In this document: positions 9,003-61,639 of the stretch, piece by piece
How positions within the stretch are numbered: position 1 is the first letter of the stretch
Layout: each line of letters opens with the position of its first letter
IMG/VR virus record: IMGVR_UViG_3300047558_000137
Location: 186,001 to 250,000 of that record
Direction: 5' to 3' (one strand)
DNA: 64,000 nt
Notes under the pieces: model-generated
Seen by the model: the letters and a program-made list of their open reading frames with translations, nothing else
Told to the model about the DNA's origin: nothing
The model's database searches: none
Program-made: the position numbers and the translations under genes

Positions 9003-10538
9003 ATGAACATCTATTTCTATAGTCCAAGCTCGGGCTATGTGAGACCGGAACAAGATCCGGACCTTTATCTAAACACCGTACCATTATACCTTGATAGCTA
9101 CATTAAAAATGAAGCTCCGCATCTCTATGAGCATATAACCTGGTGCAAAATACAATTATTAAGAAAGACCCAACAAGAAATTGTTGAACAACTAAAAGAA
9201 TACAACGCCGACATGTTATGTCTGAGCAGTTATATCTGGAACCATGTGCAAGTTATGGCTATAGCAACAGGAATTAAGCAATTCCTGCCAAACCTTATTG
9301 TAGTAGTTGGTGGTCCAAGTATTGATGTTTACCGAAATAGAGAATTTTTAAATCAACATATAGATGTTGACTATGCGGTTTATTCCCAAGGCGAAGAAGC
9401 ATTTGTGGAAATATTGGAGCATGAAATAAATCAGAGACCAATTGATCGGTTACGTGCATCAAATTTAAGTTGGCGAACTTCAACTGGAATTAGAGTTGCT
9501 GATCACAGAGTTTATAAAAAAACCAGTGGTAGTTATTATATCGATTCTAAACATTTACTTGAGCAAATAGTAGCAGATACAGAATATACTGGATACGAAT
9601 TTGCATTGCCTTATGAGACTAGTCGAGGGTGTCCGTTTAAATGCAGTTTTTGCGATTGGACCTCGGGTATTACACATAAGGTAAGCAAACGTCGATTTAA
9701 TTATCGAGATGAGTTTGAATTGTTTGGTAATCTAAACATATTGAAATTTTTTATGGCCGATGCAAACATTGGGCAATGGGACGACGACGTTGGTGTTGCC
9801 CATGCTATGTCTGATTTAAAACGTGAACGCGGATTCCAATTTCAAATACAAGGATGGAATGCTAGTAAAACCCACAAGAAAAATGCATTTGAAATGATGG
9901 ATATATTAGTCGGTGCAGACATTCTATATGCGCCTAAAATATCAGTGCAGGATATAAATGACCAAATTCTATTAGAAAATGATCGTCCTGATATCCCGTG
10001 GACTGAACATCTTACATATATACAACAATTAAAAAATAAACATCCGCATAAACCAGTAATAATAGAAATTATGATTGGACTGGTAGGACAAACTCGAGCG
10101 AGTATGCGTACTATGTTTAGAGAAATCTCTTTACATAAGTTTGTGTTTTTCCCACACCTATGGATTATGCTTCCCAATTCTCCCGCAGGTTACGACTTAG
10201 AATTTCGAAATAAAAATGAAATTGAAACTAGAATAATTGAATGCAATTATTTTATGAGTGAGCCAGCGGAAGGTGTAGTTAGCACCAAAAGTTATTCTCA
10301 AGAAGACTATGCCTACTTTGTTTTATTAACAGCCATTTATAGAATAATACAAATGGAATTTAAGCCGAAATACATCAGCATGAGTATTGATCAAATTGAA
10401 TCAACTGTTGACCGTTTAGTTTCTTCTGTAGTATTCCAAAAGGTATTTAAACAAACAGTATCCAATCTTCAACATAGTGTCGATTTATTTGACGCGGATG
10501 TCATAAGACAAATGGTATCGTTTTACTTAGTTGAATAA
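9003..10538 (+). CDS. B12-binding-domain radical SAM enzyme
   Basis: LSSYIWN..VVGGPS..GEEAF (B12-binding domain); ETSRGCPFKCSFCDW CxxxCxxC. Confidence 0.88.
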   Translation: MNIYFYSPSSGYVRPEQDPDLYLNTVPLYLDSYIKNEAPHLYEHITWCKIQLLRKTQQEIVEQLKEYNADMLCLSSYIWNHVQVMAIATGIKQFLPNLIVVVGGPSIDVYRNREFLNQHIDVDYAVYSQGEEAFVEILEHEINQRPIDRLRASNLSWRTSTGIRVADHRVYKKTSGSYYIDSKHLLEQIVADTEYTGYEFALPYETSRGCPFKCSFCDWTSGITHKVSKRRFNYRDEFELFGNLNILKFFMADANIGQWDDDVGVAHAMSDLKRERGFQFQIQGWNASKTHKKNAFEMMDILVGADILYAPKISVQDINDQILLENDRPDIPWTEHLTYIQQLKNKHPHKPVIIEIMIGLVGQTRASMRTMFREISLHKFVFFPHLWIMLPNSPAGYDLEFRNKNEIETRIIECNYFMSEPAEGVVSTKSYSQEDYAYFVLLTAIYRIIQMEFKPKYISMSIDQIESTVDRLVSSVVFQKVFKQTVSNLQHSVDLFDADVIRQMVSFYLVE

Positions 10539-15363: not shown

Positions 15364-15759
15364 TTAAGCCTCCACGGTGTAGGGTTTGTTCCAAGAACCA
15401 ATATTAACATCAACATACCAGCCCACATCAAAGTAGTCCGACTGTATGTCACTACGATCATGATTGCCTTGATTCATTGCTGTGAACAATTCAATCAGAA
15501 ACTCTTTTGCATCACCATCAAAGTGATTGCGATAGTGATAAGGATTAACATCAATGGCCTGCTTCTGTGCGGCCCAACCGTCGGGTTGATCAATAACACG
15601 AACATGGTTACCAATCAGATCCAAACGACCTGACTTGATGTTAACGCAAAGTGTCATATGATTGCGAACTGCAATAGTTGCCTTGATGCCGTATTTCTTG
15701 CAGGCTGCTTTGATAGCCGGGGCCAACTGTGCTTTGCGTTCTTGACTCATATATGCCAT
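15364..15759 (-). CDS. Conserved early phage protein (LPD29-like)
   Basis: DRSDIQSDYFDVGWY motif; CAGGAG RBS downstream of the early promoter. Confidence 0.65.
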   Translation of the reverse strand: MAYMSQERKAQLAPAIKAACKKYGIKATIAVRNHMTLCVNIKSGRLDLIGNHVRVIDQPDGWAAQKQAIDVNPYHYRNHFDGDAKEFLIELFTAMNQGNHDRSDIQSDYFDVGWYVDVNIGSWNKPYTVEA

Positions 15760-15760
15760 T

Positions 15761-15855
15761 TTCAACTCCTGGTTGTTTGTTGCTATGTCTAAATTATAGC
15801 ACCATTTTGGGCAGATTTATCCAAAAAGTGTTGTTTTGTTGCAAAAATACAACAA
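15761..15855 (-). promoter_or_regulatory. Early promoter/RBS unit (near-duplicate of 19321-19417)
   Basis: GCCCAAAATGGTGCTATAAT..GACATAGCAACAAACAACCAGGAGTT; palindrome TTGTTGCAAAAATACAACAA at 15836-15855. Confidence 0.75.
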
Positions 15856-15858
15856 AAA

Positions 15859-16023
15859 TCAATCAATTTGTACGTCAGCAATCTTCCCGTTACGGAAAAT
15901 GTAATACGAATTTACTAATCCGTAGCTAACCCAAATGCAGTTGTTACCCGCTTGCATACTGTAGTTTTCAATGCCACGTTTACGCAGATCTTCAATGACC
16001 AGCATCTGCTCAAACTCATTCAT
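15859..16023 (-). CDS. Small hypothetical protein (54 aa)
   Basis: Manual translation MNEFEQMLVIEDLRKRGIENYSMQAGNNCIWVSYGLVNSYYIFRNGKIADVQID. Confidence 0.6.
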   Translation of the reverse strand: MNEFEQMLVIEDLRKRGIENYSMQAGNNCIWVSYGLVNSYYIFRNGKIADVQID

Positions 16024-16222
16024 TTTTACCCCAAATAAATTCTTCTAAGTCGTAGAGGACTTCTGCTTTACTGTTTCCACTTTTAGAAACGATTGTCATA
16101 CATTCTTTGACGAGCAACTCGGCGAACTTTTCTTTGTCAAAGATCCAACCTTCACCGCTTGTTGATGTTGGCTCAATGTAAGTCGTAGCCTGTTCAGCAA
16201 GTTGTTTAATTCGTTCGTTCAT
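16016..16222 (-). CDS. MNERI-family small protein
   Basis: MNERIKQLAEQA..EKFAELLVKEC. Confidence 0.8.
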   Translation of the reverse strand: MNERIKQLAEQATTYIEPTSTSGEGWIFDKEKFAELLVKECMTIVSKSGNSKAEVLYDLEEFIWGKNE

Positions 16223-16419
16223 ACATATACTCCTGATTCGTATCCTTCTACGCCTTTGATGACTTCTTCAAGTGTGTAAGTATTACCAAACAACTCAATT
16301 TCTTCGGGCCAGTCGTCCATTAGCCCTTCTTGCAATCCGTATGATTGTAGTTTTCCGTTTGGCAAACGCTTACCAGCGAGGTCAAATCCTGCTAAAAACG
16401 GTTTTAATTCTTCGTTCAT
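16219..16419 (-). CDS. Hypothetical cargo protein
   Basis: ATGA-coupled within the array. Confidence 0.7.
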   Translation of the reverse strand: MNEELKPFLAGFDLAGKRLPNGKLQSYGLQEGLMDDWPEEIELFGNTYTLEEVIKGVEGYESGVYV

Positions 16420-16613
16420 TCTTCATCACTCCTTAACGGCACGGTATAACTGCTGGCACCATGAATCTTCATCATGTGTTGGGCCAAAAGCACAGCATTT
16501 TCTCGGTTTGTGGCAAACACAGGATAAAAACTAATACTGGCTTGATACTCACCATTGGGTTTTTCTCCCAACTGAGTGAAACTCAAATTCACCACAAACT
16601 CTTTGGCTTTCAT
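16416..16613 (-). CDS. Hypothetical cargo protein
   Basis: Starts at GGAGTTGAAGAATGA and ends in the variant GGAGTGATGAAGAATGA. Confidence 0.7.
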   Translation of the reverse strand: MKAKEFVVNLSFTQLGEKPNGEYQASISFYPVFATNRENAVLLAQHMMKIHGASSYTVPLRSDEE

Positions 16614-16624
16614 TCTTCAACTCC

Positions 16625-16900
16625 TTATTGAAATTGCCGACGGCTACGACCGATTTCATCACACTTGGCAACAAACTTTGGATTCAATTCAAATGGTTTA
16701 TTGATTGGATCGGTGTTCATCATACGCTTGAGTTCATCAGCATTAGCAAGAATCAACTCAGCGAACTTTTTAAGTTCATCTTCGATAAAATCTTCAGCCC
16801 AAAAGTATTCGTGACCGTTTTGGTAATTACCAACCGTGTAGATAGCACCATTGGTTTCAAACCCAGCCCGTAGAGCAAGTTCTTTTAATCGTTCATTCAT
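16625..16900 (-). CDS. MNERI-family small protein
   Basis: MNERLKELA..KKFAELIL. Confidence 0.8.
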   Translation of the reverse strand: MNERLKELALRAGFETNGAIYTVGNYQNGHEYFWAEDFIEDELKKFAELILANADELKRMMNTDPINKPFELNPKFVAKCDEIGRSRRQFQ

Positions 16901-17136
16901 TCTTCAACTCCAAAATGTTCTTTAATATTGTCTGAGCAGGCCTTAGTGACTATTGCTACCCTAATTGGATAGATTCCGAATCTTTCAACATCTTTGTGTT
17001 TATAACAAGCATCGGCACATTCCCGAACAATTAACTCAGCAAATTTTTCAACATCGCTGTCATCTGAAAAATGCCACTCTCCATTATCGTAACGGAATCC
17101 TGTCTGTTCAGCAAGTTGTTTAATTCGTTCGTTCAC
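16897..17136 (-). CDS. MNERI-family small protein
   Basis: MNERIKQLAEQ..EKFAELIVREC..KEHFGVEE (GTG start). Confidence 0.85.
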   Translation of the reverse strand: MNERIKQLAEQTGFRYDNGEWHFSDDSDVEKFAELIVRECADACYKHKDVERFGIYPIRVAIVTKACSDNIKEHFGVEE

Positions 17137-17357
17137 GGCACCCTCACAAAATCAACATTTTCAACTGCGTCAGTTTTGAACACTCTACCCAGGATGCGAC
17201 TACCAACCGTACCACTCTTACTCAAGTAGTAATCATTGTTTGGCATCAACGAACCGTAGATAGTGCCGCCCACTTTTACTCCACTACCAGGAATCTTTTT
17301 CAATAGCTTTGCTTTGAAAACAACAAGTAAATTAGGATTACTATTATGGATAATCAT
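17133..17357 (-). CDS. Hypothetical cargo protein
   Basis: Coupled between repeat blocks. Confidence 0.7.
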   Translation of the reverse strand: MIIHNSNPNLLVVFKAKLLKKIPGSGVKVGGTIYGSLMPNNDYYLSKSGTVGSRILGRVFKTDAVENVDFVRVP

Positions 17358-17578
17358 TCTTCAACTCCGAAATGTTCTTTGTATCGGTTTAGCATCCGTT
17401 CAAACGCATTGAACGCTAACTCTTGTCGATTCAATTCAATGCATTCCTTTACAATCAACTCGGCGTGCTTGACAGAAACAATGGCATAGTAAATGTCATT
17501 GTATCGGAGTGCTGGTGGCACTTTGCTATCAGCATATTCCAACGCTTGAGTGTATAGTTCTCCAATTCGTTCATTCAT
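17354..17578 (-). CDS. MNERI-family small protein
   Basis: MNERIGEL..KHAELIVKEC..KEHFGVEE. Confidence 0.85.
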   Translation of the reverse strand: MNERIGELYTQALEYADSKVPPALRYNDIYYAIVSVKHAELIVKECIELNRQELAFNAFERMLNRYKEHFGVEE

Positions 17579-17581
17579 TCT

Positions 17582-17803
17582 TCAACTCCGAAATGTTCTT
17601 GCCACATACGCTTGGGTTCGCTGATTATTGGTTGCTTTGCCATGAAACCATTCAGATTCTACCATTGCATCCAACACCATTCGTTCCATCAACTCTACAT
17701 ACTTTTCTGCGTATGCTTGACTATACGGCATTGCTGTAGTTTCGTTTTGCTTGACAGCATAGATACGAGCCTGTTGCTCAAGTTCTTGAATTCGTTCGTT
17801 CAT
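17582..17803 (-). CDS. MNERI-family small protein (3' block read in a shifted frame)
   Basis: MNERIQELEQQA..EKYVEL. Ends RTFRS over the DNA AGAACATTTCGGAGTTGA. Confidence 0.75.
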   Translation of the reverse strand: MNERIQELEQQARIYAVKQNETTAMPYSQAYAEKYVELMERMVLDAMVESEWFHGKATNNQRTQAYVARTFRS

Positions 17804-18108
17804 TTCATTGCCCCCATAATCAGGTTAGCAAACATTTGTTCTTGCTTGCTGATAGTTTCTTCAATGTCTGCATCAAGATCACGGAACTCAACATTAGAAC
17901 GGTTGCGTTGCAGAGTATAGCCGCGGCGTGCCATGAAGTGCAGGAACACATCAACAGTGTAGATCTGTGCAGTTATAAAATCAATCTGTGGCTCAGGCTT
18001 AACACGACTGTGGATTGTTTTAAATAGATCCTTGCAGTCGTGAAAGTCTTTCATGCACTCGGGCAGGTGGCGCTTTTCTTCTAACCAAGCTTCAAGATTC
18101 TTTGACAT
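17800..18108 (-). CDS. Conserved phage hypothetical protein
   Basis: HLPECMKDFHDCKDLFK..YTVDVFLHFMARRGYTLQR. Confidence 0.75.
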   Translation of the reverse strand: MSKNLEAWLEEKRHLPECMKDFHDCKDLFKTIHSRVKPEPQIDFITAQIYTVDVFLHFMARRGYTLQRNRSNVEFRDLDADIEETISKQEQMFANLIMGAMK

Positions 18109-18289
18109 CTGTGTCTCCTTGCGACATTACTTTTGAGTTGGGAATAGAAACCTTAAACCCTGCAGGATGTTCTGCAATGATATGCATACAACCATGAGCG
18201 TTTGTTTCGGGCAGAGTGTGACTAATATAAGTCAGCACCGTACCCGGTGTGATATCGTAGTGCTGTTCTATTACAACAAACTTTTTCAT
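18092..18289 (-). CDS. Hypothetical protein
   Basis: ORF with RBS in the operon. Confidence 0.65.
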   Translation of the reverse strand: MKKFVVIEQHYDITPGTVLTYISHTLPETNAHGCMHIIAEHPAGFKVSIPNSKVMSQGDTDVKES

Positions 18290-18291
18290 CT

Positions 18292-18555
18292 TTAATCCTT
18301 AAAACGCTCACGCATCACTTCCAACACGTACAACGCACTGTTGACTCGTTTGTTGACTTCTTCGGCAGAGAGACCATCATTGAATCCAGTTTGAGCGATG
18401 CGTGTGGCAGTTTGTTTAACTGTTTCAGTGAATTCAACGATCATCAACTCGGCAAAGTGATTTACCATTGCTGACAATTCTTCACTCATGCCAGCAATAC
18501 CTGTTGGGTTTTTGCTAACATACTCTTTAATATCTTCTGGTTTAATATAATTCAT
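18292..18555 (-). CDS. Divergent MNERI-related protein (start MNYIK)
   Basis: Carries HFAELMI over the block-B DNA at 18445. Confidence 0.6.
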   Translation of the reverse strand: MNYIKPEDIKEYVSKNPTGIAGMSEELSAMVNHFAELMIVEFTETVKQTATRIAQTGFNDGLSAEEVNKRVNSALYVLEVMRERFKD

Positions 18556-18677
18556 TTTGCAACTCCATTCAAATAGCGCCATCCGAGTCGTTGTCCCGAA
18601 TAATAAAACAATTTGCCATACCAGTTTTGAAACTGACCCATGGGCTGTGCCAAACGGGTTTTGTCATCGATGTACAT
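18552..18677 (-). CDS. Small hypothetical protein (41 aa)
   Basis: Manual translation MYIDDKTRLAQPMGQFQNWYGKLFYYSGQRLGWRYLNGVAK, ending in GGAGTTGCAAAATGA. Confidence 0.55.
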   Translation of the reverse strand: MYIDDKTRLAQPMGQFQNWYGKLFYYSGQRLGWRYLNGVAK

Positions 18678-18678
18678 G

Positions 18679-18882
18679 TTAGTCCTTTACTCGCTCAACT
18701 TGAGCATGTTCGATTATAACACGGTCACGGATTGCGCCATAAACTGTAATAGGCTGTGTCAACACAATGTGGTGATTAACACGACCACCATAGGCTACAC
18801 GGCTAAGTTCAACACGACCCGACACAGGAATTTCTTCCAGGTATGTGGCTTCAACATACATGCCTTCTAAGTTCCAGCTCAT
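18679..18882 (-). CDS. Hypothetical protein (start MSWNLEG)
   Basis: AAGGA RBS, ATGA overlap. Confidence 0.7.
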   Translation of the reverse strand: MSWNLEGMYVEATYLEEIPVSGRVELSRVAYGGRVNHHIVLTQPITVYGAIRDRVIIEHAQVERVKD

Positions 18883-19103
18883 TTTGTTCCTTTCAACAAC
18901 CAAGTAGTTAGAAATGGTGTGTCATCAATAATACAACATTCGTTCCCGGCTCGCATTTTGTCTTTAACTAACTGCCAACCCATGGCATTATTAAGAGACA
19001 CACGTTTACCATCTTTGGCAATTTGTTTGACACGGTAAACTCGTCCATTGTAAAAAACAACGTTTCCGATATTAATTTCACGACCAATTGCATCTTGTAT
19101 CAT
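18879..19103 (-). CDS. Hypothetical SH3-like protein
   Basis: DAIGREINIGNVV motif. Confidence 0.65.
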   Translation of the reverse strand: MIQDAIGREINIGNVVFYNGRVYRVKQIAKDGKRVSLNNAMGWQLVKDKMRAGNECCIIDDTPFLTTWLLKGTK

Positions 19104-19112
19104 ACCAACTCC

Positions 19113-19319
19113 TTAGGCAACAAAATCAAAATTATAACCGTAGGATCCATCTCGGCTAACTTGAACTTTGTTATTGTAGTCCTTGTTCAACTGTTTGAGA
19201 ATTTTGCGTGATTCGGCTTCGGTGCAGATAACTGACAGCGTACCAAAGAAGAATGTAGCAAGATCTTCTGACTTGACAATTTCTGCTACTTTGCTAAGAA
19301 CTTCTTTTTCGAATGACAT
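19113..19319 (-). CDS. Hypothetical early protein
   Basis: First gene after the early promoter unit. Confidence 0.7.
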   Translation of the reverse strand: MSFEKEVLSKVAEIVKSEDLATFFFGTLSVICTEAESRKILKQLNKDYNNKVQVSRDGSYGYNFDFVA

Positions 19320-19320
19320 T

Positions 19321-19417
19321 TATAACTCCTGGTTGTTTGTTGCTATGTCATTAGTATAACACCATTTTGGGCAAAAGACACCAAATTTCAATCTTTTTTG
19401 TTGTATTTTTACAACAA
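19321..19417 (-). promoter_or_regulatory. Early promoter/RBS unit
   Basis: GCCCAAAATGGTGTTATACT; palindrome TTGTTGTATTTTTACAACAA at 19398-19417. Confidence 0.75.
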
Positions 19418-19420
19418 AGT

Positions 19421-19564
19421 GTAACTTTACGACTATCCCGATAGGACAAGTTACTGCGCTAGCTACTGCAAAATTACCCCAGGTAGCTCAAGGGTTCTCA
19501 AGGAGCCCGGGTGCCCAATCCGGAGGGAATATTGCAATCCCAGAAAAACGCAGGGCGATTTTGT
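19421..19564. ncRNA. Candidate structured non-coding RNA
   Basis: GC-rich intergenic stretch with several stems and potential pseudoknot pairings. Confidence 0.4.
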
Positions 19565-19768
19565 TTATTTGTGTGTGTTTGCAGTCGTGCCCAAGACACG
19601 CTTCTTGCCCAGGCGGATGCCGCACACGTTGTCGTTTACGTCCACAAACAATACAGGGAATGGGCGCTCAAATTTGTAGTCGTCGTTTAAGTAATCTAGG
19701 CACAAGTGCTTAACGTCAGGGCGCTGTTGCAACTGTGTAATGTATGTGCGTTGAAATTGTGTAAGCAT
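19565..19768 (-). CDS. Hypothetical protein (start MLTQF)
   Basis: TGCTATAAT promoter at about 19802-19810. Confidence 0.6.
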   Translation of the reverse strand: MLTQFQRTYITQLQQRPDVKHLCLDYLNDDYKFERPFPVLFVDVNDNVCGIRLGKKRVLGTTANTHK

Positions 19769-19820
19769 TTTGGTACTACTTAGTTTGTTGAACAAGTCTG
19801 TATTATAGCACAAAAAAGCC

Positions 19821-19852
19821 AAAAGAAAGCCCCGCGGACGGGGCTATTTTTT
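19821..19852 (-). terminator. Intrinsic terminator after the phasin-like gene
   Basis: AGCCCCG-TCCG-CGGGGCT-TTCTTTT. Confidence 0.75.
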
Positions 19853-19866
19853 GTAGTACTTGAGTA

Positions 19867-45421: not shown

Positions 45422-45808
45422 TTAAGCAATCCAGCCCTGTCCGGATATATCATGATACCAAGTATAAAAGTTAGCAGGAATACTAAAAGTCCATGGATCC
45501 AATGTATCAATGTAACACTTTTTATTACTTGATAAGTGCTGATATTTTGGTAACACCTCTAGCCCATTCACTGTTAATCCAATATCTAATCCGCTTGTGC
45601 CTTCTTTAAACTCTATTAGATTAACATCCAGTTTAACAGGATCAAATAGATCTAATGTAAATGTAATTTTATCTACATTGATAATAAATCCGTTGAGCTT
45701 TACGAAACTATCCGTCTGGCCATAACGAGTTATTAATAGATCAACTACTAATTTTTGGTGTGTGTCAATAGCCGAGAGATCTGAGAAAGTCTTTATATCT
45801 TGGTACAT
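45422..45808 (-). CDS. Hypothetical protein
   Basis: Overlaps the end of the radical SAM gene. Confidence 0.6.
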   Translation of the reverse strand: MYQDIKTFSDLSAIDTHQKLVVDLLITRYGQTDSFVKLNGFIINVDKITFTLDLFDPVKLDVNLIEFKEGTSGLDIGLTVNGLEVLPKYQHLSSNKKCYIDTLDPWTFSIPANFYTWYHDISGQGWIA

Positions 45809-47063
45809 AATCTAAAATGGAATTCTTTCGTAGTGTTTCAAATCCCTTAAGGAATCTTATTAACTGACTTCTGTGTTGGTCTGCATCCTCGGGGACACTG
45901 TAGTTCTGCATAAAATTATAGTAGTCTATAATGGTGTCTGCAATTACCTGATTAATTCGGCTGTTATTGCGTAGGTTCAATTGTCCAGTGTGAACAAGTC
46001 CATGGCGTAGAATCACCGAAGCTATCTTATCGACAACTTCCTGTCTGATATCATCGGGCATAATCTCAATACGCAGGCAGGCTGGATCACTTAGTATATC
46101 GCAACTTTCAGCAATGACATTTTTCTCTATCATATATTCAAACAGTTGATCTAGTTCGTATGCTGTAAAAATATTAGGTGTAATACGGAGAGAAATGTAT
46201 AACCCACTTTGCTTTCGCAATTCAAGAAAGCTATCAATGTTGGCAAGTATGTCCCCAATCTTCCCGGGATACCTAACATAGTCATTTAAGTCTGTAACCG
46301 ATTCAATGCTAATGCCCATATGAAATTCTTTAAACTGTTTAATTAACTGTTCAACACGTTCGTTGTAAATTGTACCGTTGGTTGTTGTACCAACAATAAT
46401 TTCTTTGCTTAATCCTGCATCTATTAATGCCTGACATATATCATAGAAAGCTGAATCAAATAGCGTTTCGCCACCAAGGAAATGTATGTACTTAACTGGA
46501 ATTGTTTTTAGCTCTGAGACAAATTGATCCACTGCATCCCGAGTCCAACTGTGATATCGGTCGGGCTGTTTAAAAGTCTGGCTGTCAATTTGATGTAGCT
46601 TAACGTAGTCTTGTTCTAATCTACTGCTGGCGATGGGGTCACACATGATACAGGCGCTGTTACAAACATTGCCCAAATCAATTTGTAGATCAACTGGGTG
46701 CATGTCAGCTAAGCCACTATTATTTTGGCTGTGTTGAAAATGGCTGTAGTGCGGACTGCTTAGAGTCTGCAATTCAAATTGATCAGTTATTCCGCTTTTT
46801 AATAACTGTCTGCGGCGGCCGCTTAGTTTGCCAAATTGATCTTGGTAATAACAGTTTGCACAACCTGCGGGCTGTTGCCCTTCTAAAAATTGACTGCGTA
46901 GACTACGCATACGATCACTGTTATAAAACTCCATAACAGATGCGGTGCGTATATTCATAGGAGAACTGCCCCGATCTTTAAACCAGCGGCATTCTTGAAA
47001 GTCCCCGTTGTAGGTTAATCTAACGTGGAACCATGGACTAGAACAAAAAGTATTTTTTAACAT
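45765..47063 (-). CDS. Radical SAM enzyme with an N-terminal Twitch/SPASM-like Cys cluster
   Basis: FCSSPW..CANCY; GNVCNSACIMC; LGGET; TTNGT. Confidence 0.85.
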   Translation of the reverse strand: MLKNTFCSSPWFHVRLTYNGDFQECRWFKDRGSSPMNIRTASVMEFYNSDRMRSLRSQFLEGQQPAGCANCYYQDQFGKLSGRRRQLLKSGITDQFELQTLSSPHYSHFQHSQNNSGLADMHPVDLQIDLGNVCNSACIMCDPIASSRLEQDYVKLHQIDSQTFKQPDRYHSWTRDAVDQFVSELKTIPVKYIHFLGGETLFDSAFYDICQALIDAGLSKEIIVGTTTNGTIYNERVEQLIKQFKEFHMGISIESVTDLNDYVRYPGKIGDILANIDSFLELRKQSGLYISLRITPNIFTAYELDQLFEYMIEKNVIAESCDILSDPACLRIEIMPDDIRQEVVDKIASVILRHGLVHTGQLNLRNNSRINQVIADTIIDYYNFMQNYSVPEDADQHRSQLIRFLKGFETLRKNSILDYVPRYKDFLRSLGY

Positions 47064-50022: not shown

Positions 50023-50310
50023 TTATCGCCATTCATTTGCACGGTCGATTTCTTCTTGCGTAAACTGACCACCTGAACGGTCAGGGTTCTGTGCCCAACT
50101 ATCTTGTGTGGCTTTTTCGCAACACACTTCCACATCCTGCAAGATACGCTTGAGTTCGTCAATGTTAACCGCAAGGAAAGAAACTGTAGCATACAATGCC
50201 GCATCCTCGGCCATAGTACCAAGACAAAGGACCTTTCGGTGTGCTTCCAACAATTTTTCCTTGCCGGCAATTGTGTTTTTCAGATTATCTCTTACTGTAT
50301 GGATGTTCAT
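50023..50310 (-). CDS. Hypothetical cargo protein
   Basis: Starts at a repeat; ends SW..NPDRSGGQFTQEEID. Confidence 0.7.
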   Translation of the reverse strand: MNIHTVRDNLKNTIAGKEKLLEAHRKVLCLGTMAEDAALYATVSFLAVNIDELKRILQDVEVCCEKATQDSWAQNPDRSGGQFTQEEIDRANEWR

Positions 50311-50480
50311 TCTTCAACTCCAATATAAACTGCACGGCGATTCTTGTCGCTGACTTCGCTAAACCACGCAACAAAATCATCGGCCCCTTGTTTAGTATCA
50401 AACTTTTCTTCGTGATGAACTTTGTATTCTTGAGAATCCCAACGCTTGTGAATTCTGACTTCAACGATATGTTGTTTCAT
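50307..50480 (-). CDS. Cargo small protein ending GVEE (57 aa)
   Basis: Manual translation MKQHIVEVRIHKRWDSQEYKVHHEEKFDTKQGADDFVAWFSEVSDKNRRAVYIGVEE. Confidence 0.75.
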   Translation of the reverse strand: MKQHIVEVRIHKRWDSQEYKVHHEEKFDTKQGADDFVAWFSEVSDKNRRAVYIGVEE

Positions 50481-50710
50481 TCTTCAACTCCGAAATGTGC
50501 TTTCAAATCATTAGCAATAGCAAATGCTATGATCCACTTTGTATCTTCGCCGCGTTCATATTTGTAATCACGCTCGATTTTGGCGGAACATTCCTTGACA
50601 ATCAACTCGGCGAATCTTTGGGTATATGCTTTGTGGAATTCATCGCCTCGGTGGTCAGCAACAACATCATCTTCGGCCTGTTCAGCAAGTTCTTTAATTC
50701 GTTCGTTCAT
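50477..50710 (-). CDS. MNERI-family small protein
   Basis: MNERIKELAEQA..RFAELIVKEC..HFGVEE. Confidence 0.85.
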   Translation of the reverse strand: MNERIKELAEQAEDDVVADHRGDEFHKAYTQRFAELIVKECSAKIERDYKYERGEDTKWIIAFAIANDLKAHFGVEE

Positions 50711-50895
50711 TCTTCAACTCCCAAGTGATTAACGATTGCCCGAGCATTATTGTAATCAACTACATCGCAACATTCCTTGATTATCAATTCAGCGAACTTT
50801 TCTGAATACGCAATCAGCCCTTGTTCGTGGGGCAAATCTTGGTTGCGGTATTGTGCCCTGGCTTGATTCATAAGTATTGCTATTCGTTCGTTCAT
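50707..50895 (-). CDS. MNERI-family small protein
   Basis: MNERI..EKFAELIIKEC..HLGVEE. Confidence 0.85.
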   Translation of the reverse strand: MNERIAILMNQARAQYRNQDLPHEQGLIAYSEKFAELIIKECCDVVDYNNARAIVNHLGVEE

Positions 50896-51089
50896 TTTTC
50901 ATCATCCTGCAGTTTGGTTGCCAGTGCTTGACGAATTTGGTCAAACATTGACGCATTATGATTTAAGGCACTGGCAAATTTGTCTTTGATTTCAGCATCA
51001 AATAACTCGGTAGGATTACCCGTCTTGTCTGCTGTAATACGCTGTTCGGCAAGTTTTGCCAGTTCGTTAAGTTTATCGTTTAATGTCAT
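50892..51089 (-). CDS. Hypothetical cargo protein
   Basis: Lies between block C and block A. Confidence 0.7.
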   Translation of the reverse strand: MTLNDKLNELAKLAEQRITADKTGNPTELFDAEIKDKFASALNHNASMFDQIRQALATKLQDDEK

Positions 51090-51313
51090 TCTTCAACTCC
51101 AAAATGTTGTTTAACTGCGTCAAGGGCAGAGGTCGGATTCATATGTCCACGCTGTGATTTTACAATCACCTTCCATGTTTCCATAGCAACCAACTCGGCG
51201 AACTTTACTCGCCACTCATCTTGCCATTGCGTAAGCAGTAGAATTCTTTCTGTGGGAAGTTCATCTGCCCATCGTTTAGCCTCTACCATCAGTTCTTTAA
51301 TTCGTTCGTTCAT
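51086..51313 (-). CDS. MNERI-family small protein
   Basis: MNERIKELM..KFAELV..HFGVEE. Confidence 0.85.
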   Translation of the reverse strand: MNERIKELMVEAKRWADELPTERILLLTQWQDEWRVKFAELVAMETWKVIVKSQRGHMNPTSALDAVKQHFGVEE

Positions 51314-51527
51314 AGTCCAACTCCACTTCTCGTTCAACATAGGTTTTTGTTGCCATCTTTAACACAACTGCGGCACTATGGCGCCACATATCTTCACGCA
51401 TACCCAGATAACTTAACCCAAGTGCCTTAAAAGCATTGTCAAGTCCATCGTAGTCAAGTGTTGGTGCCGCAAGATGAAACTCTTTGGCACGATGCTTAAA
51501 CTCTTCCCAGGAACACGCTAATGTCAT
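51297..51527 (-). CDS. Hypothetical cargo protein
   Basis: Ends inside block A in another frame (DYERTN*). Confidence 0.7.
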   Translation of the reverse strand: MTLACSWEEFKHRAKEFHLAAPTLDYDGLDNAFKALGLSYLGMREDMWRHSAAVVLKMATKTYVEREVELDYERTN

Positions 51528-51700
51528 TCTTCAACTCCAACGAGTTCTAAAGTCCATCCAACGGGAGGTTCTTCGTTTCGTTTTTCATATCTCTTATTCA
51601 TTGTGTCACACGCTTTTAGTCTCGCTTGTTCCTCATTGATAGCACGAACGGTGACGGTTGCCGTTTTCCAGTAAGCATATTTGAAGGTATATTTGTTCAT
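51524..51700 (-). CDS. Cargo small protein ending GVEE (58 aa)
   Basis: Manual translation MNKYTFKYAYWKTATVTVRAINEEQARLKACDTMNKRYEKRNEEPPVGWTLELVGVEE. Confidence 0.75.
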   Translation of the reverse strand: MNKYTFKYAYWKTATVTVRAINEEQARLKACDTMNKRYEKRNEEPPVGWTLELVGVEE

Positions 51701-51903
51701 TCTTCAACTCCGAAATGTTTTGCAATTCTTTCACCGGCATCGTCACTGTAGTTACGGTTGGTAAAGTTTGTACCCAATGTGGCACATTCCCGAACAATCA
51801 ACTCGGCGAACTTTTCTTTATTAAAAATCTTTTGCGGAGGTGCATAGTTGTATTCCGCAAGGTCGTAAGATTCTTCAATTAGTTCTTTAATTCGTTCGTT
51901 CAT
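51697..51903 (-). CDS. MNERI-family small protein
   Basis: MNERIKEL..EKFAELIVREC..HFGVEE. Confidence 0.85.
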   Translation of the reverse strand: MNERIKELIEESYDLAEYNYAPPQKIFNKEKFAELIVRECATLGTNFTNRNYSDDAGERIAKHFGVEE

Positions 51904-52109
51904 ACCAGTTCTCCTGTAGCATCGTTGACACAGCCTCGGTAGACTGCCTTGAAAAATGATTTTGTGGGTGGTCGTTTATTATCAAACCATTCAATGTAAG
52001 CAGATGCCTCTTCTTTGGTTGAGTATTTGGTTGCAAATGTAACATCGGTCAAGTTAATCTTACCGTTCTCTACGGGGTGGACTTGGACGATGTGAAAGTA
52101 TTTGTTCAT
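51900..52109 (-). CDS. Hypothetical cargo protein
   Basis: Resembles 50307-50480. Confidence 0.7.
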   Translation of the reverse strand: MNKYFHIVQVHPVENGKINLTDVTFATKYSTKEEASAYIEWFDNKRPPTKSFFKAVYRGCVNDATGELV

Positions 52110-52273
52110 TCTTCAACTCCTTGAACCATTAGGTCCATTTCTTTTGCCAAATCTTCCATTAGATGGCGACCTTGTAGTTTCGAACCAATAAAACGGTTGT
52201 CGTAGTAGTCACTGTTCTGGCGCTCACGCTCGTCTAAGTATTCTTCTAAAACTTCTGAAAATTTACGACTCAT
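52106..52273 (-). CDS. Cargo small protein ending GVEE (55 aa)
   Basis: Manual translation MSRKFSEVLEEYLDERERQNSDYYDNRFIGSKLQGRHLMEDLAKEMDLMVQGVEE. Confidence 0.75.
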   Translation of the reverse strand: MSRKFSEVLEEYLDERERQNSDYYDNRFIGSKLQGRHLMEDLAKEMDLMVQGVEE

Positions 52274-52515
52274 TCTTCAACTCCGAAATATGTTTTCGTA
52301 TTAAGACGAATCTTTTCAATCAGTTCAGCAGACTTCTTATCGTTGTTACCGATACAATCTAACTGTTGCAACAGTAGAATGTCATCAAACTTCTTCACAA
52401 TCAACTCGGCGAACTTTTCATCAAAATACGCTTGCCTCTGTACATCATTAAACCCAATTCTTTGATTTACGGTACACCGTGCCTGATTGGCAAGTTCCCT
52501 GATTCGTTTGTTCAT
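52270..52515 (-). CDS. MNERI-family small protein (start MNKRIRELA)
   Basis: MNKRIRELANQA..EKFAELIVK..YFGVEE. Confidence 0.85.
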   Translation of the reverse strand: MNKRIRELANQARCTVNQRIGFNDVQRQAYFDEKFAELIVKKFDDILLLQQLDCIGNNDKKSAELIEKIRLNTKTYFGVEE

Positions 52516-52617
52516 TTTAATCCTTAGTATAAAGCCAGCGGCGAAATCTTGTTGATAATGTGGTTGCAACATTTACTCCAATAATCACAACCACTAACAT
52601 AATTAAAATAGTTTCAA

Positions 52618-52803
52618 TCATTTTACTTCCTCAAGTACATAATAGTCAGCATCAAACACTTGCCTGAAACGACTTGCCAACATAATAGCGTGAGATTCGT
52701 TATCTGCTTTAATATCCATTGTAACACTAGCAGCCTCATTTGTATAAAGGCTATTGTCAAGGTTAGTAAAGAATAACTCTACTTTATACGCTGTCATTTG
52801 CAT
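52618..52803 (-). CDS. Hypothetical protein
   Basis: Start revised to MQMTAYK. Confidence 0.55.
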   Translation of the reverse strand: MQMTAYKVELFFTNLDNSLYTNEAASVTMDIKADNESHAIMLASRFRQVFDADYYVLEEVK

Positions 52804-58546: not shown

Positions 58547-59339
58547 TTTTTGTTCCTTGTATATACTCATACAATTCATCTGCAATAATTTGATGTGCTG
58601 CTACTGTAGGATGGGCAGTTGCACAATCTAACATTGATTGATTTTGTAATTCCCTAATAGATTTATTTGAAAACTGTCGTGTCTGGTCAAGTAAGTTTAA
58701 CCAAGGCACCGACGACTGGCTTACGTCGATATTATTACGTCTACATAAAAGACTTAATAAGTCATTGTTCTTTTCTCTAACACGATAAAAATGTTGGTCA
58801 GGTATGTTAACAGATAAATCAAGATCTTGAAAACTGTTGGCAAACAAATGTTCTATATTATTGTTAGATAGATAGTTACTTATCAACAAAACATCTTGAC
58901 CTAGTTTTTGCAATTCGTATTCTTCATTGAAGTATCTTGAAAAGTAATCTTTAACTTCTGCTTCAAGGCCTTGATTAGTATAGTAGCCACCAGCTAAACA
59001 CGATTCTACCTGTCTAGTGGTGCTACTGTACATTTCCCATCTATAAAGGCTAGTTATTCCCCACAAGACGAATATTCTGCTGTATTTTGAACGACTTTGG
59101 TCTATAAAATCGACCAATCTACGTGCCTGTGTCTTATTGTTAGAACCGTGCTGTGCCACAAATACTAGATCGTCTAGTTGTAGGCGTCTACGTAGAATGC
59201 CAGCAAAACTATGCTGGTCTACGTAGGAAGGATCTTCGACGTGACCATAGTCAACGTTGGTAGCGGCTGGATCAGTATCAATTGATTTTGCCGCTACCCA
59301 TGAACATCCTGCTGCAACTAGTACACTAGGCTTTGTCAT
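58533..59339 (-). CDS. SGNH-like hypothetical protein inserted between nrdA and nrdB
   Basis: AGCSW..GSNN..HPTVAAHQIIADEL. Confidence 0.6.
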   Translation of the reverse strand: MTKPSVLVAAGCSWVAAKSIDTDPAATNVDYGHVEDPSYVDQHSFAGILRRRLQLDDLVFVAQHGSNNKTQARRLVDFIDQSRSKYSRIFVLWGITSLYRWEMYSSTTRQVESCLAGGYYTNQGLEAEVKDYFSRYFNEEYELQKLGQDVLLISNYLSNNNIEHLFANSFQDLDLSVNIPDQHFYRVREKNNDLLSLLCRRNNIDVSQSSVPWLNLLDQTRQFSNKSIRELQNQSMLDCATAHPTVAAHQIIADELYEYIQGTKNERI

Positions 59340-61639
59340 ATTACGCAGCTATCACAATCCTCTTGCTCTTGAAGCACTTCCTCTGGCTGGTCAGCTTTTG
59401 TTGATAATTTATCAACATCAATTTCACCTTGGCCATCGTTAGTATTGAAATAATAAAGTTGTTTTGTTCCGTACTTGTAGCACATGATCAGGTGCTTGAG
59501 CATCTCACTCATTGGAATCTTTTCATCCTCGTAGAACGCTGGATTGTACGAGGTGTTGACACTAATGCCTTGATCAATATATTTCTGTAATACTGCACAA
59601 AGTTTTAGGTAACCCTCGGGGCTACGCTGATCCCATAACAATTCGTATTTGTTCTTTAACTTGCGATACTCAGGTACAACCTGTTTTAATACACCATGTT
59701 TGCTTTGCTTCACACTAACATAACTACGTGGAGCTTCAATACCGTTGGTGGCGTTGGAGATCTGAGCACTTGTTTCTGCTGGCATTAACGCCATTAGTGT
59801 GGCATTGCGAATGCCTGTAGTTAGAATCTGTTCACGTAGAGCACGCCATGGCATACGCTCTTGATGTTCAACTAATTCATCAACTTCTTTCTTACGTGTG
59901 TCAATTGGTAGTATACCATCGGCATACTTTAGTTCTTGCCACTTAGTGCATGGACCTTGTTCTTTAGCTAGATCTGCACTTGCTTTAATTAAGTAGTATG
60001 ACCATGCTTCTGCATATTCATCAACTAATGCCAATGCAGCTGGATCGCTGTAGCTAACACCATGCTTGGCCAAGAAGTAAGCAAAGTTAATAATACCATT
60101 GCCAATCGGGCGGAATTCTTTTGTAGCGAGTTCCGCTGCCTTAACTGGATAGTTCTGATAGCTTAACAATGCATCTAGTCCACGAACTGCTAGAGTACAC
60201 ATACGTTCAAAGTCTTTAGGCTCCTTAACGTTGCCCCAGTTCTGTGCAGAAAGTGTACACAATGCAATACGACCTTCTTCGTCGTTAACATCGTTTAATG
60301 GCTTAGTCGGTAAGTCAATTTCTGTACAGAGATTACTCATCTTAATGGGATGTATATCTTCCTTAAACGGCGAATGAGTGTTGGCGTGGTCAACGTTCAT
60401 TAGGTAAATGCGTCCTGTGTCTTTACGCTCTTGCATAAACTTAGTAAACAGTTCTGCTGCCTTGAAAGTCTTCTTACGCAACTTTGTATTACGTTCAGCC
60501 TTTTCGTATAACTCTTTAAATCGGTCTTGATCGTTAAAGAATGCTTCGTACATTTCAGGAACATCGTGTGGTGAGAACAAAGTAATGTCGCCGCCTTGAA
60601 TTAAGCGTTCATACATTAGCTTGTTAAACTGCACACCGTAGTCCATCTGACGTACACGGTTTTCTTCTGTGCCTTTGTTGTTTTTTAATACTAGTAGGTC
60701 TTCAACTTCTAAGTGCCAAATTGGATAATAGATAGTGGCAGCACCATTACGCACACCACCTTGACTGCAACTACGTGTTGCTGCCTGGAATAATTTTAAG
60801 AAAGGTGTTACTCCTGTGTGGTACGCATCGCCGTTGCGGATGGGCGAACCCAACGCTCGAATACGCCCTGCTCCGATACCGATTCCGGCCTTTTGGCTAA
60901 CGTACTTGACAATACTGCTGGCAGTAGCGTTAATGGAATCAAGACTATCATCAGACTCAATAAGAACGCACGAGCTGAATTGTTTTTGCGGTGTTCGTAC
61001 ACCAGCCATGACAGGAGTAGGTAAAGAGATATCAAAGTTAGAGATAGCATCATAGTAGTCCTTGGCCCATTGTAGGCGTGTTTCTTTTGGATAGGCCATA
61101 AACAATGTAGCCGCAATCATCATGTAGGCTACCTGTGGCGTTTCGTAGATTTCACTGGTTACACGATTTTGTACAAGGTACTTGCCACGCCATTGTTCCA
61201 TGGCAACATAGGTAAATGTCTCATCACGGTCATGTTTGATATAATTGCCTAGTGTGTTAATTTCTTCTTCTGAATAATTTTCTAGTAGTTCTTTTGTATA
61301 GTAACCGATGTCAATATTACGTTTAACTAGATCTAACAATGGCCATGGTTTGTAACCACCGTAGACTTGTTTATAGATATGATATGTTAGCAAACGACCA
61401 GCAACGTATTGATAGTTCGGTGCGTCTTCGCTAATTAAATCTGCTGCACTTTTAATTAGGGTTTCTTGAATGTCTGTGCTTTTAATGCCGTTGTAAAATT
61501 GTACATGGCTGTTGATTTCCACTTCGCTAGCACTAACTCCAGTAATTCCTTGTGTTGCCCAAAACACAACCTTGTGTAATTTTTCTAGATTTAGCGGCTC
61601 TTTACGTCCGTCTCTTTTTGTGACTAATATTTGACTCAT
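59336..61639 (-). CDS. nrdA: Ribonucleotide reductase class Ia alpha subunit
   Basis: ATP cone VTKRDGRKE, QFSSCVL, SNLCTEI, ALCTL, KQLYY, terminal CDSC. Confidence 0.97.
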   Translation of the reverse strand: MSQILVTKRDGRKEPLNLEKLHKVVFWATQGITGVSASEVEINSHVQFYNGIKSTDIQETLIKSAADLISEDAPNYQYVAGRLLTYHIYKQVYGGYKPWPLLDLVKRNIDIGYYTKELLENYSEEEINTLGNYIKHDRDETFTYVAMEQWRGKYLVQNRVTSEIYETPQVAYMMIAATLFMAYPKETRLQWAKDYYDAISNFDISLPTPVMAGVRTPQKQFSSCVLIESDDSLDSINATASSIVKYVSQKAGIGIGAGRIRALGSPIRNGDAYHTGVTPFLKLFQAATRSCSQGGVRNGAATIYYPIWHLEVEDLLVLKNNKGTEENRVRQMDYGVQFNKLMYERLIQGGDITLFSPHDVPEMYEAFFNDQDRFKELYEKAERNTKLRKKTFKAAELFTKFMQERKDTGRIYLMNVDHANTHSPFKEDIHPIKMSNLCTEIDLPTKPLNDVNDEEGRIALCTLSAQNWGNVKEPKDFERMCTLAVRGLDALLSYQNYPVKAAELATKEFRPIGNGIINFAYFLAKHGVSYSDPAALALVDEYAEAWSYYLIKASADLAKEQGPCTKWQELKYADGILPIDTRKKEVDELVEHQERMPWRALREQILTTGIRNATLMALMPAETSAQISNATNGIEAPRSYVSVKQSKHGVLKQVVPEYRKLKNKYELLWDQRSPEGYLKLCAVLQKYIDQGISVNTSYNPAFYEDEKIPMSEMLKHLIMCYKYGTKQLYYFNTNDGQGEIDVDKLSTKADQPEEVLQEQEDCDSCVI

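What the first reader, a model, noticed from the sequence alone, without database searches (positions are those of the whole stretch)
16016..18677. Second array 34 kb away shares the same blocks at near nucleotide identity
Seen: four more exact block-C copies (16610, 16897, 17354, 17575) and variants at 16416 and 18552. A 32-nt block A (CTGTTCAGCAAGTTGTTTAATTCGTTCGTTCA on +) is identical at 16190 and 17104 and has one mismatch at 50678. GGCACATTCCCGAACAAT is identical at 17014 and 51781 although the flanking sequences are unrelated. Each array lies in a cluster of small genes next to an early-promoter unit. Inference: ongoing exchange or gene conversion homogenises the blocks between distant loci, so the cassette pool is genome-wide.
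Basis: partly seen in the sequence, partly recalled or inferred. Interest (0 to 1): 0.75.

Follow-up and report, generated by a model that had tools for sequence, protein, structure and literature searches.

The report
Shuffling small-gene family in a jumbo phage
The repeated blocks are the conserved start, middle and end of a huge, undescribed family of small phage genes whose two variable segments and whole gene cassettes are reshuffled at those blocks among many freshwater phages.

Summary
All listed repeats exist, on the coding (minus) strand of a 374-kb freshwater jumbo phage with a T4-type capsid. The blocks are not free-standing repeats. They are three conserved parts of about 19 paralogous genes of 62-114 aa. 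Block A encodes the N-terminus MNERIKxLAEQ. The 18-mer lies in a mid-gene block, EKFAELIVxEC. Block C encodes HFGVEE plus the stop, and also holds the Shine-Dalgarno site and the ATGA-overlapped start of the next gene. A third array lies just outside the window.

The family has about 9,500 clusters at 50% identity, no Pfam, PHROG or PDB match, and is absent from cultured phages. Synonymous sites in the blocks are far more conserved (same codon 0.75-0.82) than codon bias (0.44-0.48) or backbone orthologues (0.50) predict. This identity is no higher within this genome than against other phages, so array-to-array gene conversion is not specifically supported.

The two variable segments reassort almost freely, with tract ends in the blocks. 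A strain about 94% identical lacks the whole array, and a relative carries the cassettes at other loci.

Best reading: homologous recombination at conserved linkers, plus translational coupling. This is a new variant of the known modular-shuffling theme. Protein function is unknown.

The parts
19313..19418 (-). Upstream promoter unit of the array-1 transcription unit: inverted-repeat stem-loop (19396-19418), extended -10 (TGnTATAC/AT), conserved leader, and SD + ATG of gene 19113-19319.
   Evidence: Direct repeat D6/D8 with 15753-15856. There are four copies in the genome. Variant contigs in other samples break here.
18552..18677 (-). 41-aa non-family ORF that ends in the block-C variant GGAGTTGCAAAATGA (tail ..NGVAK*).
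18292..18555 (-). Divergent family member (87 aa, MNYIKP.., mid block NHFAELMIVEF), started from the block-C variant. It is absent from the ~94%-identical strain in run X4.
17800..18289 (-). Two non-family small genes (18092-18289, 65 aa; 17800-18108, 102 aa). They are kept in the X4 strain, so they belong to the backbone of the operon.
17582..17803 (-). Family member (73 aa) with a degenerate mid block and a frameshifted tail (..TFRS*). The block-C nucleotides are intact but read in another frame. The same cassette occurs at 229/230 identity in a different context in run X4.
17354..17578 (-). Family member (74 aa). Its V2 plus tail is 91% identical over 111 nt to array-0 gene 182233-182433.
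17133..17357 (-). Non-family cassette (74 aa, MIIHNSNP..), preceded by block C. It has an old paralogue in array 0 (73% aa identity, same-codon 0.52).
16897..17136 (-). Family member (79 aa, GTG start overlapping the upstream stop). It holds exact block A, the 18-mer of the mid block (17014-17031) and block C. This is the protein that was modelled.
16625..16900 (-). Family member (91 aa) with a divergent tail. Its stop codon lies just before a non-coding copy of block C (16610-16624).
16219..16613 (-). Two non-family cassettes (16416-16613, 65 aa; 16219-16419, 66 aa), joined by the block-C variant GGAGTGATGAAGAATGA at 16416.
16016..16222 (-). Family member (68 aa) with exact block A and a diverged tail (..IWGKNE*). 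Its V1 type is shared with many other phages that carry different V2 types.
15753..15860 (-). Downstream promoter unit (stem-loop 15834-15856, TGcTATAAT, leader, SD). It is a direct repeat of the 19313-19418 unit and drives gene 15364-15765.
50270..52572 (-). Array 2. Family members: 50477-50710, 50707-50895, 51086-51313, 51697-51903 and 52270-52515/52572. They are interleaved with non-family cassettes, some of which carry GVEE tails. Eight exact block-C copies.

Best explanation
The region is one of three to four tandem arrays of a very large, undescribed family of small phage proteins of about 70 aa. The predicted fold is helix, beta-hairpin, long helix, variable segment, helix.

Each gene has three nucleotide-conserved blocks. 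The first is the 5' end (ATG AAC GAA CGA ATT AAA ...). The second is a 33-nt mid-gene block (GAA AAG TTC GCC GAG TTG ATT ...). The third is the 3' end (CAT TTC GGA GTT GAA GAA TGA). These blocks separate two hypervariable segments, V1 and V2.

The 3' block has a second role. It is the Shine-Dalgarno site, spacer and ATGA-overlapped start of the next gene, so the cassettes are translationally coupled in operons driven by sigma70-like promoter/stem-loop units.

General homologous recombination acts on the blocks as short homology linkers. The phage encodes a RecA/UvsX-like protein and has no reverse transcriptase or tyrosine recombinase. Recombination in the mid block reassorts V1 with V2. Recombination at the gene junctions and at the promoter units inserts, deletes and moves whole cassettes and arrays, within genomes and between co-infecting phages.

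What is shown: the family architecture, the coupling by sequence, the excess synonymous conservation, the V1/V2 reassortment, the block-bounded identity tracts, and the gain, loss and relocation of arrays in relatives.

What is inferred:
- that recombination, with pool-wide homogenisation and loss of copies that drift, keeps the mid block uniform;
- that translation-initiation function keeps block C and the first codons uniform;
- that the operons are early;
- that the proteins form a repertoire of binders with two variable surface elements, plausibly aimed at variable host factors.
For: Family architecture:
- 18-19 members in the genome share the three motifs.

Synonymous conservation, measured against codon bias in 251 members from other contigs:
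- CGA Arg 94% (background 12%); GCC Ala 93% (18%); GAG 95% (28%); TTG 92% (27%); GGA 98% (20%).
- Same codon at identical amino acids in the blocks is 0.75-0.82. Codon bias predicts 0.44-0.48, and backbone orthologues of G000 and G001 give 0.50.
- V segments of the same type give only 0.55-0.72.

Block C:
- It is kept in other reading frames and in non-coding position.
- It precedes non-family genes in 118 of 188 in-frame cases.
- 199 of 204 members with the tail overlap the next start as ATGA.

Recombination at the blocks:
- Pairs sharing a V1 type share the V2 type in only 39 of 872 cases.
- 32 of 37 multi-member V1 types combine with more than one V2 type.
- Complete four-gamete squares exist.
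- Of 70 ends of tracts at 93% identity or more, 51 lie in the blocks, which make up 26% of positions. Only 1 lies in V1 or V2, which make up 17%.

Mobility of cassettes and arrays:
- Run X4 holds a contig about 94% identical that lacks 15942-17794 and 18285-18550.
- X4 also holds cassette 17574-17803 at 229/230 identity in another context.
- Another X4 contig follows the N-terminus plus V1 of gene 16625-16900 and then diverges at the mid block.
- The relative G001 (354 kb) lacks array 1 at the syntenic site. It has an array at a site where G000 has none, and that array carries a homologue of a G000 array-0 cargo gene (83.5% aa identity, same-codon 0.66).

Enzymes:
- A RecA/UvsX-like gene is present.
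- No reverse transcriptase or integrase was found, and the control genomes did match.
Against: - No experiment shows recombination at these blocks or translational coupling. Both are read from sequence.
- The blocks are nearly invariant, so homogenisation by recombination cannot be separated from direct purifying selection on the DNA or RNA.
- Most comparison sequences are short-read metagenome assemblies. Exact repeats of 30-57 nt could create some chimeric joins, although the 33-nt mid block is shorter than the k-mers assemblers usually use, and the same combinations recur in independent data sets.
- Tract ends falling in blocks is partly expected by construction once whole V segments differ.
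- The protein's function is unknown; no fold or family match was found.
Confidence: 0.68

Rival explanations
1. One reading: ongoing gene conversion between the arrays of this genome homogenises the blocks (intragenomic concerted evolution).
For: Blocks are near-identical between arrays 20-55 kb apart. One V2-plus-tail segment is 91% identical between array 0 and array 1. Other loci show a slight within-locus excess of same-codon identity, 0.82 against 0.80.
Against: Same-codon identity within G000 (0.75) is not above identity between G000 and other phages (0.78), and values between arrays equal values within arrays. Non-block sequence duplicated between arrays is saturated at synonymous sites (0.52). 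No private block variants mark this genome.
Confidence: 0.15
2. The blocks are kept uniform mainly by direct selection on the nucleic acid, and recombination at them is a by-product. The selected element could be a translation-initiation region and coupling junction, an operator for a translational regulator or nuclease, or another DNA or RNA signal.
For: Block C is SD + spacer + ATGA start for the next gene in 199 of 204 cases. It is retained when the upstream ORF is frameshifted or ends early. The same GGAGTTGA context is used in promoter-proximal leaders of G000 and G001. Synonymous conservation in block A falls with distance from the ATG.
Against: The mid-gene block is just as conserved, with non-preferred codons, and lies far from any start codon. 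No Rfam match was found. A candidate helix between block A and the mid block fails, because its mid-block positions are the variable ones. No RegA or RegB homologue was found, although the controls for those searches were silent.
Confidence: 0.3
3. Ordinary paralogues: block identity reflects only protein constraint plus codon bias.
For: The blocks do coincide with the three conserved protein motifs.
Against: Non-preferred codons are fixed position by position, and same-codon identity is 0.75-0.82 against 0.44-0.50 in the controls. Block C is conserved in other frames and in non-coding position.
Confidence: 0.02
4. Artefact: the mosaics and arrays are chimeric joins made by metagenome assemblers at short exact repeats.
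For: Logan unitigs of the source sample break at the blocks. Array unitigs have depth 17-19 against 26-31 in the flanks.
Against: The repeats (33-57 nt) are shorter than the reads. Unitigs overlap end to end along the assembled path. The same V types and combinations recur in ENA, JGI and NCBI assemblies, and some proteins occur on up to 27 contigs. Arrays with the same junction occur in several independent jumbo contigs.
Confidence: 0.04

Closest known systems
PeSL (promoter-early stem-loop) cassettes of T4-type phages (Arbiol et al. 2010, PMC2839356; Comeau et al. 2014, PMC4122927)
   Same: Short conserved sequences in plastic regions full of small early ORFs act as homology points for insertion, deletion and replacement of genes between close relatives. 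The promoter/stem-loop units that bracket array 1 fit this description by sequence, and variant contigs break at them.
   Different: Blocks A, mid and C hold no promoter and no terminator. They are coding sequence and a translational-coupling junction, and the mid block mediates exchange inside a gene.
gp38 adhesin of T-even phages: conserved glycine-rich motifs separating hypervariable segments (Trojet et al. 2011, PMC3157838)
   Same: A conserved scaffold with interchangeable hypervariable segments that are swapped between phages at the conserved motifs.
   Different: There is no sequence relation. Here the gene is a small multi-copy gene in presumed early operons, not a single tail-fibre adhesin. 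There are two variable segments, not four. Conservation extends to synonymous sites across about 9,500 clusters.
Modular theory of phage evolution, with conserved linker or boundary sequences between modules (Botstein 1980; lambdoid boundary sequences) - cited from memory, not read here
   Same: Homologous recombination at short conserved sequences placed at module borders.
   Different: Here the linkers are frequent, sharply defined, partly intragenic and shared by thousands of genes.
Integron gene cassettes
   Same: Arrays of promoterless small cassettes expressed from an upstream promoter, with variable content between strains.
   Different: No tyrosine recombinase is present, no attC-type imperfect inverted repeats were seen, and the junction is an RBS/start overlap.
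Contingency gene families diversified by segmental recombination (e.g. pilE/pilS, vls) - general knowledge
   Same: Conserved blocks flank variable segments that are exchanged among many copies.
   Different: There is no single expression site fed by silent copies. All copies look expressed, and exchange appears to run largely between genomes.

Membership tests
PeSL cassette (applied to blocks A/C) | sigma70-like -35/-10 promoter inside the repeat | tested here: not met
   Block C plus block A is the coding end, SD and ATGA start. It holds no promoter hexamers.
PeSL cassette (applied to blocks A/C) | Stem-loop terminator/attenuator | tested here: not met
   No inverted repeat lies in or next to the blocks.
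PeSL cassette (applied to units 15753-15860 and 19313-19418) | Promoter plus stem-loop, intergenic, ending in the SD and start of the next gene | tested here: met
   Inverted repeat, TGnTATAAT, conserved leader, and CAGGAGTT.. followed by ATG. This rests on sequence only.
PeSL cassette (applied to the promoter units) | Indels between close relatives bounded by the units | tested here: inconclusive
   X4 and X3 contigs join 15857 to 19854 and 19385 to 19853/4. One contig per joint, from a metagenome.
PeSL cassette | Excised mini-circles | not testable with these tools
   Needs PCR or long reads on phage DNA.
Concerted evolution by intragenomic gene conversion | Paralogues within a genome are more alike than copies compared between genomes | tested here: not met
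   Same-codon 0.75 within G000 against 0.78 for G000 versus others.
Diversity-generating retroelement | Reverse transcriptase with a template/variable repeat pair | tested here: not met
   No RVT_1 hit in the genome while the controls matched. V segments differ in length and cannot be aligned.
Integron | IntI tyrosine recombinase and attC sites | tested here: not met
   No Phage_integrase hit while all 14 controls matched.
Translationally coupled operon | Stop/start overlap with the SD inside the upstream ORF | tested here: met
   199 of 204 members with the tail end in ATGA, with GGAG 7 nt upstream. This rests on sequence only.
Any described protein family | Significant match in Pfam, PHROGs or PDB, or a fold match | tested here: not met
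   The only matches are uncultured-phage hypothetical proteins.

The most novel reading that the evidence does not exclude
The blocks are recombination signals maintained because they make the family evolvable. On this reading, freshwater T4-type and jumbo phages share a virome-wide combinatorial library: about 160 V1 types and about 190 V2 types in a sample of 268 sequences, on one small scaffold. Each phage carries 5-20 members as a repertoire of binders against variable host factors such as defence proteins. That would be a phage counterpart of segmental antigen-receptor or adhesin diversification, but driven by ordinary homologous recombination between genomes.
Probability: 0.25. Interest if true: 0.85.

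Novelty: new variant of a known kind. Interest (0 to 1): 0.6.

Why it matters
If the reading holds, this is a clean natural case where short conserved DNA linkers, one of them inside a gene, organise combinatorial protein diversification across a whole viral community. The signal is measurable as synonymous-site conservation in thousands of genes. It also points to a very abundant small-protein family of uncultured freshwater phages that has no annotation. And it gives testable predictions: recode the linkers and measure recombination, test block C as a portable coupling junction, and look for binding partners.

Tried and rejected
- Pfam, PHROGs, the PDB profile search, the ESM Atlas and Foldseek against PDB, AFDB, BFVD and Atlas gave no family or fold beyond uncultured-phage hypothetical proteins.
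- GenBank phage isolates gave no DNA match and no protein match, apart from one weak hit in a spring-water metagenomic contig.
- Rfam found nothing credible.
- I looked for an RNA helix between block A (CGAACGA) and the mid block (UUGUUCG). I rejected it because the mid-block partners are the variable positions, the Val third base and the following codon.
- RegA and RegB homologues, as candidate GGAG or TIR-binding regulators, were not found, but those searches had silent controls, so this is uninformative.
- Reverse transcriptase (DGR) and tyrosine recombinase (integron-like) are absent, with working controls.
- Testing block C in family genes with no coupled downstream gene failed: only 5 such genes exist.
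- Many 'joints' inside the array in the read layout were set aside. They come from paralogous array 0 or from other phages that share the blocks.
- Literature searches for the motifs and for similar descriptions found nothing beyond the PeSL and gp38 papers.
Full report
**Where the window lies.** The window is bases 186001-250000 of a 374,314-bp IMG/VR virus record with 40.7% G+C. The phage has a T4-type major capsid protein (Pfam Gp23). Its nearest cultured relatives by capsid are jumbo phages: Sinorhizobium phage Phosso 76%, Vibrio phage 2.275.O 74% and Pseudomonas phage PA5oct 70%. Near-identical DNA is found only in freshwater, aquatic and riverine metagenomes.

**Check of the observation.** Block-C coordinates are one base off, and the 16416 variant carries a small insertion. 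The exact 14-mer core of block C occurs 17 times in the genome, always on one strand. The copies fall in three clusters:
- genome 181.2-183.4 kb, a third array just upstream of the window;
- genome 202.6-203.6 kb, which is this finding;
- genome 236.3-238.3 kb, the array near window position 50 kb.

**What the blocks are.** All genes here are on the minus strand. Read on that strand, block A is the first 11-12 codons of a gene (MNERIKQLAEQ). The 18-mer encodes IVRECA inside a mid-gene motif, EKFAELIVxEC. Block C is ..HFGVEE plus a TGA stop, and its GGAG and the ATGA overlap also form the ribosome-binding site and start codon of the next gene. A profile built from these genes finds 18-19 members of 62-114 aa in the genome. 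They are interleaved with unrelated small ORFs that are also preceded by block C.

**Size and status of the family.**
- The family profile matches 9,472 clusters at 50% identity, 2,385 of them at E <= 1e-10.
- A search of the 90%-identity database was limited to 8,000 scored candidates; 7,980 of them matched.
- 269 relatives were found in IMG/VR, with up to 14 members in a 12-kb locus.
- It has no Pfam, PHROG, PDB or fold match.
- It is absent from GenBank phage isolates.
- An AlphaFold model of gene 16897-17136 has mean pLDDT 84. It shows helix 3-10 (block A), a beta-hairpin at 15-22 (V1), helix 26-45 (mid block) and helix 58-75 (C block).

**Is block identity more than protein constraint?** Yes.
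- In 251 members from other contigs, non-preferred codons are fixed position by position. The figures are CGA Arg 94% (background 12%), GCC Ala 93% (18%), GAG 95% (28%), TTG 92% (27%) and GGA 98% (20%).
- The exact 21-mer CATTTCGGAGTTGAAGAATGA ends 87 of those 251 genes.
- The fraction of identical amino acids that use the same codon is 0.75-0.82 in the blocks. Codon bias predicts 0.44-0.48. Twelve backbone orthologues of this phage and its relative G001 give 0.50.
- Variable segments of the same type in different contigs give only 0.55-0.72. So the blocks are more uniform than shared ancestry would make them.
- Block C is also conserved where it is not read as HFGVEE. In this genome it is read in two other frames (tails ..TFRS*..YPRS*..ENISELKND*) and once lies after the stop codon.
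- In other loci there are 262 copies of block C. Of these, 188 end a family gene in frame, and 118 of those are followed by a non-family gene. Another 41 are in-frame tails on non-family ORFs, about 15 are in other frames, and 18 have no upstream ORF.
- Of 204 members with the tail, 199 overlap the next start as ATGA.

**Is it gene conversion between the arrays?** Not specifically.
- Same-codon identity is 0.75 within this genome and 0.78 between this genome and others. Comparisons between arrays (0.73-0.77) equal comparisons within arrays (0.70-0.77).
- A non-family gene present in both arrays 0 and 1 is 73% identical in protein and saturated at synonymous sites (0.52). Its flanking family genes carry different variable segments.
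- Whatever keeps the blocks uniform therefore acts across the whole family, not within this genome.

**Evidence for recombination at the blocks.**
- Homologues show free reassortment. Gene 16897-17136 shares its V1 with proteins that have other V2 types, and shares its V2 with proteins that have five other V1 types.
- In 268 distinct sequences, 32 of 37 multi-member V1 types pair with more than one V2 type, and 32 of 40 V2 types pair with more than one V1 type.
- Pairs that share V1 share V2 in only 39 of 872 cases, and complete four-gamete squares exist.
- A nucleotide alignment of gene 16016-16222 with a member of L026 is near-identical through block A, V1 and the mid block. All similarity stops after GAATGT.
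- Of 70 informative ends of tracts at 93% identity or more between contigs, 51 lie in the blocks (26% of positions) and 1 lies in V1 or V2 (17% of positions).

**Movement of cassettes and arrays.** The relative G001 (354 kb, syntenic, orthologues 40-90% identical) differs as follows:
- It has only about 0.8 kb where this genome has the 5-kb array-1 region.
- It has two weak members at the array-2 site, and a solo member at a further site.
- It has an array at a site where this genome has none. That array carries a homologue of an array-0 cargo gene at 83.5% identity, with a same-codon fraction of 0.66, which is above the backbone value.

In another freshwater sample, run X4:
- A 2,968-nt contig about 94% identical to the window joins 15941 to 17795 through 73 other bases and skips 18285-18550. 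That strain therefore lacks all eight array genes and the divergent member.
- The same run holds cassette 17574-17803 at 229 of 230 identity in a different context.
- Another contig follows the N-terminus and V1 of gene 16625-16900 and then diverges at the mid block.
- Further contigs join 15857 to 19854, and 19385 to about 19853, close to the two promoter/stem-loop units that bracket the array as direct repeats.
- Depth peaks over the blocks in all four runs, which shows that many other phages in these waters carry them.

**Mechanism.** The genome has no reverse transcriptase and no tyrosine recombinase, and the controls for both searches were positive. It does encode a RecA/UvsX-like protein. 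The best-supported reading is therefore general homologous recombination at short conserved linkers, as proposed for PeSLs in T4-type phages (PMC2839356, PMC4122927) and for the conserved motifs of gp38 adhesins (PMC3157838). Here it operates at three points per gene, one of them intragenic.

Block C and the first codons are also explained by their role as a translation-initiation and coupling junction. The mid block cannot be explained that way. Whether its uniformity comes from recombination-driven homogenisation or from an unknown nucleic-acid function remains open. A candidate RNA helix was rejected, and Rfam found nothing.

**Caveats.** Coupling, promoter activity, early timing and protein function are inferred from sequence only. 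Most comparison data are short-read assemblies. In the source sample the array unitigs have lower depth (17-19) than the flanks (26-31). That may reflect population heterogeneity or an effect of the repeats on assembly.

**Verdict.** The region belongs to a large unannotated small-protein family that evolves by modular shuffling at nucleotide-conserved linkers. This is a new variant of a known kind of phage genome plasticity.

Noticed in passing
outside the window, genome 178446-183702 (loci L001-L005, L102): A third array lies just upstream of the window, next to an ATP-dependent DNA ligase gene (genome 179136-180437). It holds 8 family members and 6 block-C copies.
   Followed up: partly
window 15753-15860 and 19313-19418; genome 55555 (+) and 180828 (-): Four copies of a PeSL-like unit: stem-loop, TGnTATAAT, and the leader ACATAGCAACAAACAACCAGGAGTT.. 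followed by ATG. The relative G001 has its own version with the same leader and SD context.
   Followed up: partly
window 16098-16131, 17015-17048 (mid block) versus 16610-16624, 16897-16911 (block C): The mid block and block C share TTCG..GAGTTGA, read in different frames (F-A-E-L against F-G-V-E). This could be chance, an old internal duplication, or a shared nucleic-acid signal.
   Followed up: no
window 16192-17661 versus flanks (run X1): In the probable source sample, unitigs inside the array have word depth 17-19 while the flanks have 26-31. This hints that part of the population lacks this array configuration.
   Followed up: no
protein P0011 (163 aa); genome 183358-183702: Some members read through block C in another frame (..NISELK..) and continue. 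In P0011 this fuses two family units into one protein.
   Followed up: no
window 15364-15765: This 133-aa gene sits downstream of array 1 here, but its homologue in G001 (54.5% identical) sits next to the array-2 site. Non-family genes also move between these plastic loci.
   Followed up: partly
window 62103-63440, 45765-47063, 9003-10538, 59336-61639: Other genes in the window: a pectate-lyase-like protein with an Mtd_N domain (probably a tail fibre or spike), a radical SAM/SPASM protein, a B12-binding-domain protein, and the large subunit of class I ribonucleotide reductase.
   Followed up: no
window 19828-19845: A GC-rich hairpin with T runs on both strands (a bidirectional terminator-like site) lies upstream of the array-1 promoter unit. 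Variant contigs in other samples rejoin at 19853-19854.
   Followed up: no
window 52700-52760: Upstream of array 2 there is a different promoter-like sequence: TTGACA, then a short AGCCT/AGGCT hairpin, then TGTTACAAT.
   Followed up: no
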